A model generated the notes under the pieces. That model had not been told where the DNA came from. It worked only from the letters and a program-made list of their open reading frames with translations, and made no database searches. Source: Salisapilia sapeloensis CBS 127946 (taxonomy: Eukaryota; Protista; Oomycota). From it: a stretch of DNA of 38,899 nucleotides. The position numbers and the translations under genes are program-made. Numbering within the stretch: the stretch's first letter is position 1; each line of letters begins with the position of its first letter. Positions 28,469 to 38,899 of the stretch are shown piece by piece. The stretch spans positions 1-38,899 of the forward strand of contig JAADVB010000179.1 in assembly GCA_023334545.1 (NCBI GenBank). The letters run 5' to 3'.

Positions 28469-31400
28469 ATGCAAGCTGGGGACACGTCGGAAATCCTTGT
28501 CAATGCTATCTATCAAAGATACTCGTTTCAACCGCGCAAGAAGGTTGACTTGAGCGTATACACTCCATTGATCGGAGGTAAGCAGGGAGATGTAGATGAG
28601 TTGATTGCAGCACATCTTTCGGAGGAATGCGTTCAACTTATTTTGAAAGGATTGCCAGCACTTGGCTGTGCTAAAGGTATGGCAGAAGAGTGTATGATAG
28701 AGTTGCCGTAGATGGGTGGATACTGACAATGGTGTAGATTACCGACGGTTGCTTAAGCGATGCATTCGACTGCGGGAACTCAACGTATCGGATGCAACGA
28801 ATCTTAGCGTAAGCTGACACTTGTGCATGTATTTGCTGATCTCTCTCACTTCCAGCTGCACATTAGAAAGCTGCTTTCGTCGCCATTGCACAGCAGTGCC
28901 CTCACATTGATACGCTTGTGCTGAGCGACTTGGACTACCTCACAGACAGTCTAGTGAAAAAGATACTGACAAGTTTTCACAATCTCCACTCTATCGATAT
29001 TGGAGGGTGTGATGCTTTGACGGATGCTGCCATAAAAGTCATTACGACAAACGTGGTCTTTCTAAGGTCCATTCGCGTCGACGACTGTTATCGTGTTTCT
29101 GACCGCTCTATGAAGCCAATGATGGAGACTCATGGCCACAACCTTCGACTTGTATCCTTTCGACGCTGTGTAAAAGTCACCAACGCTACATTGAGGCAGC
29201 TTCTCGCGACTAAACCGAAGGAGCTTATCGAATTAAACGCGGCAGGCTGCACGTCCTTAAGTGATGAAGCGACAGAATTTCTTACAACTGTACCGGCGTA
29301 CTTTGGGGAACGAAAGTTGCCAGGCTACGAAAACTTGCGCCGAATCGATATCTCTGGATGCTACAAGTTTACCAGTCTCACGTGCAGTTGGATAGCGGCT
29401 GCTTGTCCTCTCTTGCTTTGTTTAAACATATTTGGTTGTACTGGAATATGTGATAAAGGGGTCAAAGCCATCGCGTGTCTGCAATATTTAGAGGATTTAG
29501 ACATATCTGGTTGTGTCAACTTGACAGTGAGCGGCTTAATGCATCTGTTTAGTGCTGCACCCACCACATCGTACCTGCACGAAAGTCAAACTGTTTCTAG
29601 ACAGCCCTTCGTGAGGTTGGCGATGCAAAACGTCCAGTCTCTTTCGGACCCGCATGTACTTGCCATCATTGGTTCTAGCTCCAAACAGCTATGCTACCTA
29701 GATATATCTTTTACTTCAGCTATATCCCCCGCGACACTAGCCCAGCTCGTGCGTGTCTGTAAGAATGTTGAAGAGCTATATCTAAGACGTCAACCAGGTG
29801 TCAATCGCATGGTCATGGCGATGCTTGCAACAAACAACTTTAAGCTTCAGGTGCTAGACTTACGTGAATGTATTGGCGTCGATGATCTTGCATTATATCC
29901 GTTACTTGTGATGAGATCGCTTCGAAAGTTGTATCTCTCAGGCTGTTCTAAGATCTCTGCAAAAGGTATGAAGACACTCCCACCAACATTGACTGAGTTG
30001 CACTTGCAATATCTTCCTCAAAACGTAGTCACAGATTATGTTTGTGAAACTATCGGTCCTCGTTGCCGAATGTTAGAAGTACTAGATTTATCTTACTGCT
30101 GTGGTATTTCTACGACTGGTGTTCGAAAGATCCTTCAATGCTGTCAATATCTCTACAGTCTAAATATATACGACTGCAAGACCATCACCATCGAGCAACT
30201 TGACCAGATACTCCAGAAAGATGAAAGAGTTCGCTACGGTGTTGAGGTTCTTCACGATGAAGAAATGAAATATTTTGGTTTTCATTCGTCTGACCCACAA
30301 GTTGCGATGAAGGCGCGTGCACGGGAAAAGGAACTGGCAGCTTATCGACGACTTAATGCCGCCGCTACGTGGATACAGAACTTTTACCAAAGCTATCGTC
30401 GTCGTTTGGCAACCACGAAAGACCGCAAACAGCGAGAATGGAATGAGTTCTGCGCTGTAATTGATATCCAACGCACTTGGAGAGGGTACTATGCTCGAAG
30501 AGCGTACACTGTACATAAGCAGAAGTTTGTGAACTTTGTCGTCAAACTCCAGCGTCTTTGGCGTAGAATTATTGAGTCTAGAAAAATTCGTAGAGCAATT
30601 GGTTTCTGGACGAACCGAATTCTCATGATTCGCTTTATTCAATGGAAAGCAGCGTTCCAACGTTTGCAAATGGAGAGAATAAGAGCAAAGAATCATCTAC
30701 ATTCTGTCAAGGCATTACAGTTTTTCACAGAGCGACGTGCAGGTCCTATTTTCTATGCCTGGCGGAAGCACATATTGAGAGAACGAGAAGTGAAGAGTAA
30801 GGTCTTGAACTTCTTACGATACAAGTCGCTGCCAAAAGTGTTGTCCGCTTGGAGAGAATTGTTAGCATACGACAAAGAACGTCAATGGAAACTCTCCGTT
30901 GTTTTCTTAAACGTTGCAGATCTGGAAACATACAACTCAAGTGTTCAACGCCCTCTTGTCGATCGATCATACAATGCAGTAAAGAAATTAGTTTGGAGGC
31001 GATGGAAACAATTTGCTTCAGTACAAAAGAGCTTTGTCATGAAAGCTGCATTTTCTATTATTTCTGGGGTAACGCTACGGTGCATAAATAACCATTGTAC
31101 GCACGTTCTAACGTATTTTAATTGCCTATAGAGCCTGCTGCACTGGGGATTTCGTCAATGGAACCAAAATGCAAAGCGAAAGAAGCATTTACGAGAGAAA
31201 ACGAAGAAGATTGCTCGGAGACTTGTTCATCGCGATATATTGTGCGTTTGGAATGGCTGGCGAGACTATATCGAGCGGAAAAAAGCAATGAAGCGGGCAC
31301 TTGCTCTGCTATCCAACAGTATCGTGAACAAAACATGGTTTGCATGGAAGCGAGAGCATGAGCATACAGTCGCCTTACGCCAGATTTCAGGGAAGCTTAT

Positions 31401-34400
31401 AGGTAGACTTTTGAATGGTAATCTGTCGCGTGCTGTGGCTTCCTGGTACGACTTCACCCAGGAACAACTTGTTTTGAGGCAGCGTCTACGGCAAGTTGTG
31501 GCATTAATGACGAATGGCACACTGGTACGAACGTTTTACGCTTTCGTACAACACAGGCAAGAGATGCAGCTCTTCCGTCGCCGAATGCGTGCTCGGATGG
31601 AGAATGCAGACTTATTCTATCGTTGGACGAGATGGGTCAAGTACACACGAGATTGTCAGCTAGTCTATCGTTCAGCTTCAGTTTTACAAGCTTTTTGGCG
31701 TGGAACACGTGCTCGGAGGGATGTAGAAGATTGGTTTTTAAAAAGACTTTGGGCTGTTGTCAAGGTTCAAAAAGCTTGGCGCGGACGCTTAGGTCGCATG
31801 CTGTTGCTGGCAGCTACAAGAAAGTCTCGCTTGAAAGAGTACATTCGTGCAGAACGGGAACGAGATGCACTGCTACATGAAGAACAGTTGATGCGACAAT
31901 TTAATCGGGATATTGAAATGATCGTCCTACTGCAAAGGCAATGGCGTGGTGTTGCCGCACGGACGTTGTACTTTGAAGTTCGGCGCGCTCGAGTGATTAA
32001 AAAGAAACAAGAAGAGCGAGAGTTACAGGAACTCGTACGAGCAGAAGCCATGAGGAGAAAAATGAATCGTGTGTACCGTCAAAAGTTGATGGAGCTGTCA
32101 GCGATCACTATTCAACGCTTTATGCGTGGCTATTTGGCACGGCTTTGGTATCGAGGTCAACAAGAAGCGATAGTAGAGAGACGGACTGCGATATTTTTAC
32201 AAGCTGTCTACCGGGGAAGAATTTCACGGCGAAAGACTGCAGCCCTGAGGCGTAGTTATGTCACTCGGATGGAGATGTTGGCAAGAAGAGCAGTAGAAGG
32301 GAAGGTGCTACGAACAATGGGAGCCACGACTCGTCCAACACAACGCAGATTAAGGCGCTTTTTAAACTTCTTTGGTTTAGATCCTGCCACCTTTTTAACC
32401 GACATTCAACTCGTATTTCAGGAAGTTCGAGAGGATTTTCAGCGTCTGCGTTTGTTCTTTGATATTGTCAAAGCAAAGGTGAATGCAAATGCTGAAAAGC
32501 AAGCGCAGTTGACTCTAGGGACCAGCGTAGAGCGAGTTCATCCGCTTACAAGCCGATCAAGCTTAAATAGTTTTCGTGGAAAGTCTGACGCGACAAAGAA
32601 GTTTATTAGTGACTTAGATAAGATTGTTGCTACGACACAAAAGGAACAGAAGAAAGAGGAGCGTGCAGTTGCCGTTGGAGACGCTGTTCGAATTGTTTTC
32701 CAGGGTCATTCTCGGTGTGGTGAGACAGGCTGCGTACTGCAGATGAAAGATGGAGTGGGTGAAGTCAAAATGGATGTGGATGGTGCACTTGAATTTATTC
32801 CACTTATGATTCCCGCGACAAAGGTGGAGCCTGAGAAGCCTGTGCTACATCGAGTACCTGACATGACATTCACAGCGGTTTCGCTGAAGCGTATTGATGG
32901 TCACATTAGTTTGCAGTGGAGAGAAGAATTAATAGCGTATGCTGAAACCATTGCAGAAGAGTCAAAGCGGTATTGTGCCGCACGTGTAATCCAATGTGCT
33001 GCTCGAACGTACTTGTCTCGAGTAGCTTATCAGGAAGAGTTGGAAAAACAAGGTGTATATGCCGCCCGGAGACAACGTGCTTTATTAAAAATATTGCAGG
33101 CTTTCGGTGGAGACAACAATCGGATCACAAATATTCTCGAACAACTATACTTTGTACGACCATTGAACATCCCTCGTGGACTCTTGGATGAACCATTGGA
33201 AATACAGAAAATCATTAATCGTTTCCAAAGGTTTCTCGCTCGTCAAAAGGAAATTTACAACGCATTCATGCGACTATCACCTGACATGTATCAAGGAAGT
33301 GGTGAATTCTACGGGCAAATGATGCCAATTCCTTTCCAAAAAGTTATTGATCGTATACTCTTTTATCCTCTCCGGTGGATGGCAAGAGTCACTCGCGTAC
33401 CTGCTGCGACTTTCGCTGAGAAGAGAGGAATGGCGATGCTAGCACATTTTCTTGGAGGCGCTGAATTCGTGAAAACGTTTGAAGAAAAGCATGTTTTAGC
33501 TCACTCACACTTGTTCATTCAATTAAAGCAGTGTCATTTCTGTGCCTCGGAAGGCTGGGCAATGGTTCACGGTGTTTTCGTGAAGCGGAAACTTAAGTTG
33601 AGTGCGGATGGGACGCCATTACCACCTGATATACTTCAAGATGACAATGAAAATGGGAAGAAGAAGTTAAAGAAGATAAAGAAGAGGACCAGAAGAGTTC
33701 CACATGGATGGGGAGTAGCTCATTTCTTGTCGGGTCAGGTAGGCGCTGGCGTTAGCTGGCTGGCAAAAAACTCTATCGAGGCACAGTTTAAAAGTCTACA
33801 ACTAATGAAGAGGTTAAAGCAACAGGAGAAAGAAGAAAGGCTACGGCAACAGATATTACTACGACAAGGTACTTTGAATGAAAAGCGATCAAAGGAAGGA
33901 CCAAGGGGTTTTGCGAAGAGACATGCAGAGCTAAGTTTTTTGGAAGAACAGCTAAAGGACTTATATGCACGACTAATTAAGGAAAGAGACCGATGTGACG
34001 CCGAAGAGCGTAGCATTTATAATCATGAGAAAGAGATGAATGCAAAAATTGAAACGCAGAAAATTGAGCTGATGCGTCAGGGAAAGGAGCTTAGTGAACT
34101 TCAGCAACAACCACCGGATATTGTCGCAGAAGTTTTTATGATTGAATCACCCAAGTCGCCACTTGAGTTTCTTATTCCTGGGTGTCGATTTGAAGTGGAG
34201 ATGGATGATGGAGATTGGTACGAATGTGACTTGCTATCTATCGATCCGTATGTTGATTGCATAGCAGAAATTAAATTTGTTGTCGATGGTCAGATAGAAA
34301 AAATTAAACTCATTGAGGAGAAAGAAAGTGACGATACAGCTAGTGAAGTAGAGAAGCCACGACAGTCTGTGAGGGAAATTAAGGCTGCTGCTGCGGCTAG

Positions 34401-37400
34401 AGCTAGAATGAAATTAATTCCGTTCCGTAAGTGGAGAGCTGGTAGTGCAGTCGATGTTGAATGGGAGGAACCAGTGGATAATGGTGCTTCTATCTTGAGA
34501 TATATCGTTGAATGGAAAGATGAAGAAGATGAAGCTGTTCATGGCTCTAGTGTGATCGGACTGCCTTTCGACAATGTGGTAGATGACACGAAACCTACTA
34601 TACCAAAGAGCACAACATTGTGGCCCATAGCTTCATCCCAAGCTACGTCACTGCGGGTACGTGTGGCAGCTGAAAATATGAAAGGCCGCGGAGGAGCTGG
34701 GCTTTACCTGCCGTTACCAGAACTTATGACCGAAGTCAGCTATAGAACAGCAGTCCGACTACCAACTCCCAAAGTAGACACCTCCGAAGACGAGGCATTG
34801 GAAACTGCTGCAATGGAAAGGGAAGACACTCTATCACAAAATTTCCGTCGTCAACTTACTTGTACTATTTGCAAGCTAAATTTTGGAGATAATGAAAGTG
34901 TGTATGAACATATCGCTTATGCTCACACTGTACCGCTCACTTGCCCATTCAAGTCATGCCAGCAGATTTGTTCCTCAGAACAAGCATTTCGTTATCATTT
35001 GTGGAAATGCACTGTTCCAAAGCCTACGCCAGAGGAACTGCAGAGTGAAATATTCATGGAAATCTTTTCTATTTCCAAGCAATACTGCTTTCGAAAGCCA
35101 CGTCGACATGCTTTACCATCGAACAGTCCACTGCATGAGCGTGGTGGAGAGGACTTGTATTTGGAGGGAAAGTTTAAGGAAGCTCGTATTGCTTGGATAC
35201 AGCTAGCAGAGGAGATTCATGATCGTTGCTTGCTTTATGATCGGGTTCAGCGAGAAAGAGAAAGAGACAATCGATTTGTGCCTCCTGAAGAAATGTTTGG
35301 AATCGATTTCACTGCTCCAGACGTGAATGTTGCACGTCGCAATGACGTAGTCCGTGCCCGCGAGAATTTGGAAGAAGAGCTGGAAGCTTACACGCTAGAG
35401 ACAAACGCAAAGTTAGACCAATTACGACATGAAGAAAAAGAGCTGCAAGAGTACATTGCATTAAAAACAAAAAGGTTGAAAGCAACAGAAGAAGAATGGC
35501 AGAAGCAGTCATTAAAACGTGAGAAGAAGAAAGCGATGAAGAAGTTAGCAGGGATTCAAGAAGATATATCATTACTAGTAAAAGTGTCTACAGAGCGCAT
35601 TTATGAAATGAAAGAAGAGATTGAACGCTTGACTACGATCGAAAAAGCTTTCGTACCTTTTACTCATCAAGTTGTTCGTCTGATGCAACTCAGTGACACA
35701 TTACGCAAGGCCCATGAGCGTACCAATACCATTTTACAAGCGCACCGAGCGCTTTTGGACTATTACCACGAAGATTTGAAGAATATGATGAACAGGTCTG
35801 ATCATGAAGTCCAAGGTCTCGAAGCTTGGGATGCGATGGTACAAGCTCGTCGAGAGCAGCTTCAAGCACTTCAAGAAGAGATGCGTCGCATGCAACTTAT
35901 TCATCGGGCAGAATTAGAAGGATTGTGCCACAAACGAGATGAAGGAGATGAAAAGTTCCAGCTATATCGCTTACGAATGCATCAGGATAAGTTTACTGGG
36001 AGAAAGGAGCGAGCTATGCAGGAGCTTTTAAGCAAGAAAATTGGTCGGAAAATGGCCAAAGGTCATGCAAAGGAAGAGGACTCGGATGTGCCAGAGCCTT
36101 TCCACAATGCGCTCGAGTCAGTTCAAATTGCAAACCATGATTTGGTACTCCATGAGAAGTTTATACAAGGCAAAGATGCAGAAGCAGACTATTTGAAGGA
36201 CGAAGCAAATCTTTCTGCTCGACTATCAGTTACGAATGAGGAGGACAGCTCTAGTGAGCAGGTGAATGACCTGACTATCCAAGAGGAAGCTGATGTAGTC
36301 GCGGAGGCAACGTTAGTTGAAACACAAGACCCACTTACATCTGAAGAAGATGGTGTAATCGTCCGCGGTGTCGATATGAAGAGGCGGAACGTGGACGAAT
36401 TGCCTCACACATACCGAAGACTCGAGTGCAGCTTTGTAGATGGCTTCATATATGGTGACGTTCGAATTGAGTTTAATGATGGATCCGTGTACGAAGGACC
36501 GTGGGTCAACGATGCGTCATACCATCAACAGTACGCTACAGAGCAGCCGATAGTAAGTGATAACCATTGGGGAAAGTTTACGTACCACGGGGATGGTAGT
36601 GTCTGGGAGGGTGAAGACGTGGACAACTTCTTTTCGCCATTTGTAGCAAATGGGCATCATTTCCAAGTAACAACAAGCGAAGGGCACCAATACGAAGGCG
36701 GTGTACGGAATGGACTCTTTCATGGTACTGGCACATTGCACATGAATTTCACATTTTCACAAGGCGAGTACATTGGCGAGTGGGTGAATGGAAAACGTGA
36801 GGGGTATGGAATTGAGCAATACGATGGTGGGGAAGTGTATGAAGGAGACTGGCACAACGACCTTCGCCATGGCACTGGATCGATGATTTATGACGATGGC
36901 TCCAAATACGAAGGACATTTCGAGTATAATTTATGGCACGGTGATGGCATTCGAACACTTGCCAATGGTGATAAGATATCTGGTTGCTTCGCGAATGGGT
37001 ACTTGAATGGCTCAGGTTTCCTCGAGTACGCGGACCGAAAGAGCTCATACCGAGGAGAGTTTAGAAACACGTTACGGCATGGCTTTGGACTGTTAATATT
37101 CGCTAATCGAGATAGGTATGAAGGGCCATTTGTGGATGGCGAAATGCATGGCGAGGGAAAATACACGACTTACATAAAGGAAGAGGAAACGATAGCAGGC
37201 CTTGGCGAGCAAATCGATCGAATGGGGAAATGGGTGAACGGCGAGCGTGTTGCTTGGTTAAGCAATCCAAGCACACGTGCTGCTACAAATACCTTCATCA
37301 ACTACTTTGCTACTCAGCGAACGGTGGAAGGCGAACAGGAAATGGATTTGCAAATACCAAAGTTTAAGACACCGTACGCTGTCATGGTCGCGAGTATGCT

Positions 37401-38899
37401 ACCGAGCTTACCAGAAGGTGTTGATGGCGGAAATGCGTTCGTACAAACTATTGTTCAGATGTTAGCCAAGTCACAGAACGTTGTCATCGGATCCAATTTG
37501 CTTGAAACCTCAATTGAAGAGCACAGTTCTGTGCAGCGGGAATTGAACGATGAAGTGGAAGCATTGGACGCGTATCAGAACACGATGGAGGAATCAGAGC
37601 GGCATTTGCGTGCTGAACGAAGGAGCATGCAAGTAGCGGAAGGTGAGCTTGAGAAAGCAATAGCTAGAGAACAGGAGCTACAGATAAAAGTCGAAACATT
37701 TTGGAAGAAGGATACGAATGGACTTGAGAAAGAGTACAAGCGGGCAGTTGCAATGCTTCAGAAGACAGATGTCATGTACTTCCATCGGCTTCGATCCGCC
37801 CGTCTTGATGCTGCTTGCACATCACTGCTGGATGCGTTTTGCATCCTCTTAAATTTCACTTCAAACTTCTACCTGAATGGTCAATTCTATCAACCAACAA
37901 GAGAGGATGTCGTAAAGATGTTATCGAACAGCGATGAAAATGTGGCTTTAGGTGATAAAGAAGGCCTGATTCATCGTTACAATGTGAAAGCATTGTATGT
38001 ACTTCCGCTGTTCGATATCTACTCCTTTAGCGAAGGCACTCGTAAAGATATGCTATTCAGTTTAACTCCAGTGATTCATCATCCTCGACTTCGTCCAAAC
38101 AACGCGAAAATATATCAAATATCGCCTGCACTCACAGCCATTTGCGTTTGGGTGCGAGCTGCTTACTACTATGCGAAGAAAGCAACTGAGATCTACCCCG
38201 TTGTTCAGCGTTCATTAGACATTATACATGTTCTTGACAGACAACGAGAAGTCGTACAGGAGGCTAAAGCGGCATTTGTGGATGCCAAGTTACATCAGAG
38301 AGCAGTTCGAGATGAAGTAGAGATGCGAGAAGAAATGATCAAAGAGTTGAGAGCAAGGGAGAGGCGATTGGCCAAAGTTGTGCAGGATATTGAGATGCTG
38401 GATGCTATTGAGCAGAAGCGTCTACATAAAAAGCATATCAAGTTACCATCGCCGGTGCGTCCGGTTTCAGCTAGCTTTCGTAGAGATGCTGGAAATGACA
38501 GTGAAGACGGTGGTGCGTTGCAATCGATCAATCATCGTCAAGCCTTTTCAGAGACTCATGATCCAGAGGAAGAGCTGAAGAAGCAGGAACGGAAAGTGAA
38601 GGAGGATATTATGGAATCCATTGTGGCGGATGACGAGGTGGCTCAAGAGTTTGATCAGCTTAAGCGAGAAATTACCAAGGTTTTAGATAGAGGAGGAGGA
38701 AAGGTTCCGATGGACGATGTCCCAGCCTTGTTTGAGGAAGTCATGCTAAAGCCACTGGATCCGAAGTACTATGGAGTGAAGAAGTTGCGGACTTTATTAG
38801 AGCTATTAGAAGATGTTTGTACGATCGTGCCACCTCGGCGAGAGGGTGATACCGAAACGCTCGAATACCCTTTAGCATCCGAAGACGACAATGGAAATG
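28469..38899 (+). CDS. Giant multidomain protein (>3400 aa, 3' end outside the window): LRR - IQ - Sfi1-like - IQ - KOW-like - Tudor-like - FN3 - zinc fingers - coiled coil - MORN - dynein stalk/MTBD-like - LOTUS/OST-HTH-like
   Basis: Exons 28469-28676, 28738-28808, 28867-31068 and 31132->38899, with GT-AG introns that preserve the frame. Reading the last exon in frame +1, I found no stop to the window end. Domain motifs are listed in the findings. Confidence 0.88.

What the first reader, a model, noticed from the sequence alone, without database searches (positions are those of the whole stretch)
38650..38830. LOTUS/OST-HTH-like domain directly after the microtubule-binding module
Seen: LKREITKVLDRGGGKVPMDDVPALFEEVMLKPLDPKYYGVKKLRTLLELLEDVCTI fits the OST-HTH pattern (helix, G.i.l..l...y....g..ld....G...l..ll..l...v). 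Established: LOTUS domains bind RNA or DEAD-box helicases in Oskar, TDRD5/7 and MARF1. Inference: together with the Tudor-like and zinc-finger modules, this suggests microtubule-anchored RNP localisation, which I do not know to be described in oomycetes.
Basis: partly seen in the sequence, partly recalled or inferred. Interest (0 to 1): 0.7.

Follow-up and report, generated by a model that had tools for sequence, protein, structure and literature searches.

The report
Known LOTUS domain, giant oomycete scaffold
The stretch really encodes a LOTUS (OST-HTH) winged-helix domain near the end of a giant oomycete scaffold protein. The same domain in the same protein family was already catalogued in the 2010 paper that defined the domain, so it is a correct but ordinary call.

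Summary

The domain sits about 75 residues after a dynein-stalk/MTBD-like module, inside a conserved oomycete protein of more than 3,400 residues. The gene continues on contig C405 with a U1/JAZ-like C2H2 finger and a WW-like domain.

It is not new. Anantharaman et al. 2010 list a Phytophthora ramorum protein as SFI1+TUDOR+MORN x4+OST-HTH+WW. Their alignment contains the P. ramorum orthologue's LOTUS sequence, and they already proposed RNA localisation to cellular sub-structures. NCBI names one orthologue "OST-HTH/LOTUS domain".

The linker after the wing is acidic, variable in length and unstructured, so the domain is the minimal subtype. That argues against Vasa-type helicase binding. Function remains inferred. 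The scan holds no earlier LOTUS note.

The parts
38632..38865 (+). LOTUS/OST-HTH winged-helix domain, full predicted fold: helix 1, strand 1, helices 2-4 and a two-strand wing
38656..38829 (+). Core segment matched by Pfam PF12872 (profile positions 4-62 of 71)
   Evidence: 27.1-28.8 bits against a cut-off of 23.8. The genome scan gives 28.2 bits and this is its only match.
38421..38631 (+). Low-complexity linker between the stalk/MTBD-like module and the LOTUS domain
   Evidence: Translation. Saprolegnian orthologues align only from about residue 60 of the query piece, which is where the LOTUS begins.
37500..38420 (+). Coiled coil, globular part, coiled coil resembling the dynein stalk and microtubule-binding domain, with no motor
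   Evidence: phmmer against PDB: the top seven hits are dynein heavy-chain stalk/MTBD regions, best DNAH1 8i3j_A at E 5.8e-4. Pfam gives no hit at E 0.05. An earlier scan note, s1-280852, reads it the same way.
36424..37230 (+). MORN repeat array
   Evidence: PF02493 at 100.5 bits, 5 stretches in window:36301-37500.
34858..35000 (+). Internal C2H2-type zinc finger(s), weak match
   Evidence: zf-C2H2_3rep E 0.0036 and zf-C2H2 E 0.043, all below the cut-offs.
31132..32700 (+). IQ-motif region (listed as SFI1 in the 2010 architecture)
   Evidence: PF00612 IQ at 53.9 bits. The SFI1 label comes from PMC2848206 supplementary file 1.
28867..31128 (+). N-terminal leucine-rich-repeat part of the same gene, separated from the main frame by one stop at 31129-31131 (a probable short intron)
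   Evidence: LRR_6 at 52.9 bits. Frames. Orthologues carry the same LRR families.
38866..38899 (+). Start of the acidic linker that leads to the U1/JAZ-like C2H2 finger and WW-like domain on contig C405 (L003:3-581); the contig ends inside the gene
   Evidence: The last 141 nt of the window are identical to the first 141 nt of C405 and of C367. On L003 the frame stays open to a stop at about nt 581.

Best explanation
This is a genuine OST-HTH/LOTUS winged-helix domain of the minimal subtype (mLOTUS), with no C-terminal helix 5. It lies near the C-terminus of a giant scaffold protein found across oomycetes. The domain order is LRR, IQ/Sfi1-like rod, weak FN3-like match, C2H2, MORN, motor-less dynein stalk/MTBD-like module, LOTUS, U1/JAZ-like C2H2, WW-like. 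The orthologous Phytophthora domain was already catalogued when the family was defined in 2010. Shown here: domain identity, fold class, conservation, position and the absence of the extension. Inferred: the LOTUS, together with the adjacent U1/JAZ-like finger, most likely binds RNA. G-rich or G-quadruplex RNA is the activity reported as ancestral for LOTUS domains. The rest of the protein would hold that RNA or RNP at a cytoskeletal site through the stalk/MTBD-like, IQ and MORN modules. I put domain identity at about 0.95 and the RNA-tether mechanism at about 0.35-0.4.
Against: No binding activity of any kind was tested. The domain piece is net acidic in this species (K+R 12, D+E 20, pI 4.5) and in most peronosporalean orthologues. 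Seven basic positions are conserved, however, and the saprolegnian domains are basic. Some LOTUS domains, such as Tapas and NE0665, showed little G4 binding. The zinc-finger family matches are all below their cut-offs. The MTBD-like neighbour rests on marginal sequence E-values, and microtubule binding is untested. The model of LOTUS plus linker plus finger is of an orthologue (P0011), not of this genome's protein, because here the gene is split over two contigs.
Confidence: 0.6

Rival explanations
1. The domain works like an extended LOTUS (Oskar, TDRD5, TDRD7): it recruits and stimulates a DEAD-box RNA helicase rather than binding RNA itself.
For: The closest solved structures are the first LOTUS domains of TDRD5, TDRD7 and Tejas, which are helicase-binding eLOTUS domains. 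Tudor and LOTUS co-occur in those proteins, and TUDOR is listed for the Phytophthora orthologues.
Against: Vasa binding requires the C-terminal extension (helix 5), and removing it abolishes binding (PMC5458760). Here the wing is followed by an acidic, Pro/Gly-rich linker of variable length with no predicted helix, and then by the zinc finger. The same paper notes that non-animal LOTUS domains appear to lack the extension and that those organisms have no Vasa orthologue.
Confidence: 0.12
2. The domain is a protein-protein or self-association module of the scaffold, for example dimerising as Oskar LOTUS does in some insects, with no nucleic-acid role.
For: The domain is net acidic in this species, net charge -8, pI 4.5. 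It sits among protein-interaction modules: WW-like, MORN, IQ and LRR. Oskar eLOTUS showed no RNA binding in one laboratory's assays.
Against: Seven basic positions are conserved throughout the oomycetes, including the invariant Lys-Lys at the start of the last helix. G4-RNA binding has been reported across kingdoms. The adjacent finger is of an RNA-binding C2H2 type, though the match is weak.
Confidence: 0.22
3. The match is chance, or the domain is a generic winged helix that is not a true member of the LOTUS family.
For: The scores are only 3-5 bits above the cut-off, and 21.9 bits (below it) when the whole 2,589-residue frame is scanned. A PDB sequence-profile search found no LOTUS chain. 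All Foldseek E-values are above 0.01.
Against: There are independent hits in 21 of 24 orthologues. LOTUS structures fill the top six structural ranks, well above generic winged helices, in two models. The orthologous sequence is part of the founding OST-HTH alignment.
Confidence: 0.03

Closest known systems
Phytophthora OST-HTH proteins of Anantharaman, Zhang & Aravind 2010 (Pram1000000908: SFI1+TUDOR+MORN x4+OST-HTH+WW, 3,507 aa; Psoj1000010146: TUDOR+OST-HTH+WW; Pram1000012897: OST-HTH+WW)
   Same: This is the same gene family. The window's C-terminal 490 residues are 41-42% identical at 99-100% coverage to giant P. ramorum, P. sojae and P. infestans proteins with IQ, MORN, OST-HTH and WW. 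The alignment row in the paper's supplement reads the same as the LOTUS of the P. ramorum orthologue P0025. The paper draws the same functional inference of RNA localisation to cellular sub-structures.
   Different: The 2010 architecture does not list the dynein stalk/MTBD-like module, the LRR head, or the U1/JAZ-like finger between OST-HTH and WW. In this genome the canonical terminal WW of the orthologues was not found on the 1,005-nt continuation contig.
TDRD5 / TDRD7 / Tejas first LOTUS domains (eLOTUS; PDB 3s93, 3rco, 8wxs)
   Different: Sequence identity is only 13-19%. The C-terminal helix-5 extension needed for Vasa binding is absent here. The protein context is different, and oomycetes have no germline.
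MARF1 LOTUS domains (mLOTUS; PDB 5yad)
   Different: MARF1 has tandem LOTUS arrays with a NYN nuclease and RRM domains. Here there is a single LOTUS in a cytoskeletal scaffold.
Drosophila Oskar LOTUS (PDB 5a48, 5a49, 5nt7)
   Different: Oskar's domain has the extension and binds Vasa. Identity is about 8-10%, and Oskar's partner domain is an SGNH-like OSK domain.

Membership tests
OST-HTH/LOTUS (Pfam PF12872) | Match to the family profile above the curated gathering score | tested here: met
   27.1, 28.8 and 28.2 bits against 23.8. It scores 21.9 bits only when the whole 2,589-residue frame is scanned.
OST-HTH/LOTUS (Pfam PF12872) | Winged helix-turn-helix fold closest to solved LOTUS domains | tested here: met
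OST-HTH/LOTUS (Pfam PF12872) | Family match and sequence conservation maintained across orthologues | tested here: met
   21 of 24 orthologue pieces match PF12872. Nearly invariant positions include Gly54, Lys56, Lys57, Leu61, Leu62 and Leu64.
OST-HTH/LOTUS (Pfam PF12872) | Binding of G-rich or G-quadruplex RNA, reported as the ancestral activity | not testable with these tools
   Known only from PMC7498356.
Extended LOTUS (eLOTUS) subclass | C-terminal extension that forms helix 5 and is required for Vasa binding | tested here: not met
   The post-wing linker is acidic and variable in length. In the orthologue model it has no secondary structure and low confidence before the zinc finger. The definition is from PMC5458760.
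Extended LOTUS (eLOTUS) subclass | Binds and stimulates a DEAD-box helicase C-terminal RecA domain | not testable with these tools
   No multimer prediction or assay is available.
Oomycete giant SFI1/IQ-MORN-OST-HTH-WW scaffold (Anantharaman 2010 architecture) | Collinear full-length similarity and the same domain order as the Phytophthora proteins | tested here: met
   42 oomycete proteins match at E 1e-58 to 1e-145 over 78-100% of the last 490 residues. IQ, MORN, OST-HTH and WW were found in P0025. LRR, IQ, MORN and OST-HTH were found in the window.
Oomycete giant SFI1/IQ-MORN-OST-HTH-WW scaffold (Anantharaman 2010 architecture) | Tudor domain upstream of the MORN repeats | tested here: inconclusive
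   No Pfam hit at E 10 on the two candidate SH3/Tudor-like stretches. The 2010 call used profile methods that I did not repeat.
Oomycete giant SFI1/IQ-MORN-OST-HTH-WW scaffold (Anantharaman 2010 architecture) | C-terminal canonical WW domain | tested here: inconclusive
   A WW-like three-strand unit follows the finger on L003, but the canonical terminal WW of all orthologues was not found in any frame of the 1,005-nt contig C405. It may lie beyond the contig end, or it may have been lost.

The most novel reading that the evidence does not exclude
In oomycetes the apparently single LOTUS domain is wired next to a motor-less dynein stalk/MTBD within one polypeptide. The protein would then be a static tether from microtubules to RNA or RNP, for example at the basal-body or flagellar apparatus or on hyphal microtubules. 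That would be a route to RNA localisation independent of motor transport. Neither the 2010 catalogue nor any paper found in the library describes this LOTUS-MTBD adjacency.
Probability: 0.25. Interest if true: 0.55.

Novelty: already known. Interest (0 to 1): 0.15.

Why it matters
As a domain call it adds little. The orthologous Phytophthora domain is in the founding OST-HTH alignment, and automatic annotation already tags several orthologues. Two points may still be useful. The domain is of the minimal subtype, which steers experiments towards RNA binding rather than helicase binding. It also lies next to a dynein-stalk-like module that the 2010 architecture missed. Together with the U1/JAZ-like finger, this gives a concrete and cheap hypothesis of a microtubule-anchored RNA tether for a protein conserved in every oomycete lineage sampled, including major crop pathogens.

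Tried and rejected
- A profile of the 24 LOTUS pieces searched against PDB sequences found no LOTUS chain, only a spurious PLP-transferase hit at E 0.12. Sequence divergence is too great, so structure comparison was needed.
- All Foldseek E-values were above 0.01, although TM reached 0.78. The VIA-align second look resolved the ranking.
- Pfam at E 10 on the two Tudor/SH3-like stretches returned nothing, so I do not endorse 'Tudor-like' from my own data.
- Pfam found no dynein MT family on 37501-38500. Only the PDB phmmer search gave marginal dynein hits.
- Literature searches for LOTUS with oomycete or Phytophthora returned only the 2010 paper as relevant. A search for LOTUS with dynein stalk or MTBD returned nothing that combines them.
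- The scan's notebook holds no LOTUS note for this genome.
- I did not run the large representative-protein search.
Each piece was searched by reference, and the intact LOTUS-linker-finger-WW unit was modelled on orthologue P0011 instead.
- A chance match or generic winged helix was considered and rejected (see the rival explanations).

Full report
**What is in the sequence.** It lies in an open frame of 2,589 codons (31132-38898) that runs off the end of the window. The window is the whole of contig C455 of a 22.4-Mb, 1,365-contig assembly. The last 141 nt of the window are identical to the first 141 nt of two short contigs, C405 and C367. On C405 (L003) the frame stays open for about 190 more codons and then stops. 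C367 carries in-frame stops. Each piece was searched by reference and the joined step was left out.

**Is it a LOTUS domain?** Yes.
- Pfam PF12872 (OST-HTH/LOTUS) matches nt 38656-38829 at 27.1 bits (E 4e-6) on a 152-residue piece and 28.8 bits on an 85-residue piece. The curated cut-off is 23.8.
- Only when the whole 2,589-residue frame is scanned does the score fall just below the cut-off, to 21.9 bits.
- A six-frame scan of the whole assembly with the same profile finds this place and no other (28.2 bits, E 3.4e-5).
- A word-index protein search with the last 490 residues returned 42 proteins, all oomycete where a source names them. They include Globisporangium, Lagenidium, Pythium, Phytophthora, Nothophytophthora, Plasmopara, Thraustotheca, Achlya and Aphanomyces, at E 1e-58 to 1e-145. 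Most are 2,400-4,200 residues long.
- The LOTUS segment aligns in all but one of them, a partial protein model (P0020) that ends before this region. In the Saprolegniales the alignment starts at the LOTUS, while the linker before it does not align. Mean column identity is 58%.
- Scanned one by one, 21 of 24 orthologue pieces match PF12872, best E 2.6e-8.

**Fold.**
- AlphaFold2 on the 24-row alignment gives pLDDT 86 with the order helix, strand, helix, short helix, helix, two-strand wing.
- Foldseek E-values are weak for so small a domain. Even so, TDRD5 (3s93) and TDRD7 (3rco) reach TM 0.76-0.78 at rmsd 1.6-1.7.
- A second model, of the orthologue P0011, gives the same ranking.

**Which kind of LOTUS.** Jeske et al. 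2017 split the family into two subclasses. Extended LOTUS domains have a C-terminal extension that becomes helix 5 and is required for Vasa binding. Minimal LOTUS domains lack it (PMC5458760).
- Here the second wing strand is followed by an acidic, Pro/Gly-rich stretch that ranges from about 15 to about 45 residues among orthologues. It runs straight into a C2H2 finger.
- In the model of the orthologue's LOTUS-to-WW unit, this stretch has no secondary structure and the lowest confidence of the structured part. The LOTUS, the finger (strand pair plus helices) and a three-strand WW-like unit are all confident.
- I therefore class the domain as minimal.
- Ding et al. 2020 report G-rich and G4 RNA binding for animal, plant and bacterial LOTUS domains, with exceptions (PMC7498356). 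That is the best available guess at the activity here.
- The following finger has invariant Cys, Cys, His, His and weak matches to zf-C2H2_jaz, SF3a60/Prp9 C-terminal and zf-met. These are all RNA-associated C2H2 types, and all matches are below the cut-offs.
- Against RNA binding, the domain piece is net acidic in this species (12 K+R against 20 D+E). Seven basic positions are conserved, however, and the saprolegnian domains are basic.

**Context.** From my own scans the gene contains:
- LRRs at 28867-31128;
- IQ motifs at 31132-32700;
- a weak FN3-like match and weak C2H2 matches around 34400-35000;
- a MORN array at about 36424-37230;
- no Pfam family on 37501-38500.

That last stretch finds dynein heavy-chain stalk/MTBD regions as its top seven PDB sequence hits. 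The best is DNAH1 8i3j_A at E 5.8e-4, and the conserved Cys-x-Trp-Val-Arg-Ala motif is aligned. This agrees with an earlier scan note (s1-280852). I regard the resemblance as real, although on my own data its statistics are marginal. I could not reproduce 'Tudor-like' with Pfam.

**Comparison with what is known.** The founding paper of the domain (Anantharaman, Zhang & Aravind 2010, PMC2848206) says the following:
- OST-HTH occurs in stramenopiles.
- It is fused there to Tudor and WW domains and to MORN repeats.
[quoted passage not shown] The alignment row for Pram1000012897 reads the same as the LOTUS of the P. ramorum orthologue I retrieved, P0025. One orthologue is named 'OST-HTH/LOTUS domain [Phytophthora cactorum]' by NCBI, and five others carry a precomputed PF12872 tag.

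Three things are not listed there: the stalk/MTBD-like module immediately upstream, the LRR head, and the finger between LOTUS and WW. I found no paper that combines LOTUS with a dynein stalk or MTBD.

**Verdict.** The mechanism is an mLOTUS plus U1/JAZ-like finger acting as an RNA-binding end of a cytoskeleton-anchored scaffold, and it is inferred, not shown. I put domain identity at about 0.95 and the mechanism at about 0.35-0.4. The most novel reading still open is a static microtubule-to-RNP tether built from a motor-less dynein stalk next to the LOTUS. It depends on the neighbouring finding, not on this one.

**Limits.**
- The large representative-protein search was not used, because the family scans had settled the domain.
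Absences from it (Albugo, Hyaloperonospora, Peronospora, Bremia) therefore mean nothing yet.

Noticed in passing
G000 contigs C1058 (L006:1-1143, minus strand), C907 (L005:4099-4709 and beyond) and C367 (L004): There are decayed partial copies of the 3' part of this gene. C1058 covers residues 2070-2450 at 93% amino-acid identity with in-frame stops, and its upstream flank is unrelated. C907 covers residues 2386-2589 and beyond at about 78% identity, with a frameshift and many stops, including stops inside its LOTUS copy. C367 shares the window's last 141 nt exactly and then carries stops in the finger and tail. They look like pseudogene fragments or degenerate segmental duplicates.
   Followed up: partly
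window 38759-38899; L003:1-141; L004:1-141: The contig ends inside the gene at a branch point, and two contigs share the same exact 141-nt overlap. This looks like a de Bruijn-graph break caused by the duplicated 3' end. The intact continuation is C405.
   Followed up: yes
L003:440-1005: Every orthologue ends with a canonical WW domain after an acidic spacer. On C405 the frame stops at about nt 581 without it, and no frame of the 1,005-nt contig matches it. It may be a lost terminal WW, an unseen intron, or lie beyond the contig end.
   Followed up: partly
whole assembly G000: The six-frame scan with PF12872 found only this one OST-HTH place in 22.4 Mb. The 2010 catalogue likewise lists only this protein family for Phytophthora. 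The giant scaffold may be the sole LOTUS protein of oomycetes, though the scan's first-look filter limits its sensitivity.
   Followed up: partly
L003:165-245 (and column range 96-122 of alignment A2): A C2H2 finger lies between the LOTUS and the WW-like unit. It has invariant Cys-x2-Cys, His and Trp-His, plus a long following helix. Weak matches to dsRNA-binding JAZ-type and SF3a60/Prp9-type fingers suggest a U1/matrin-like RNA-binding finger that the 2010 architecture does not list.
   Followed up: partly
window 38614-38868: The LOTUS piece is strongly acidic in this species (net -8, pI 4.5). In Saprolegniales orthologues it is basic (pI about 9.6). This is a large charge shift within one orthologous domain.
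   Followed up: no
window 31129-31131: A single stop separates the 754-codon LRR frame (28867-31128) from the 2,589-codon frame in the same reading frame. This is consistent with a short in-frame intron, as another note of the scan suggests.
   Followed up: no
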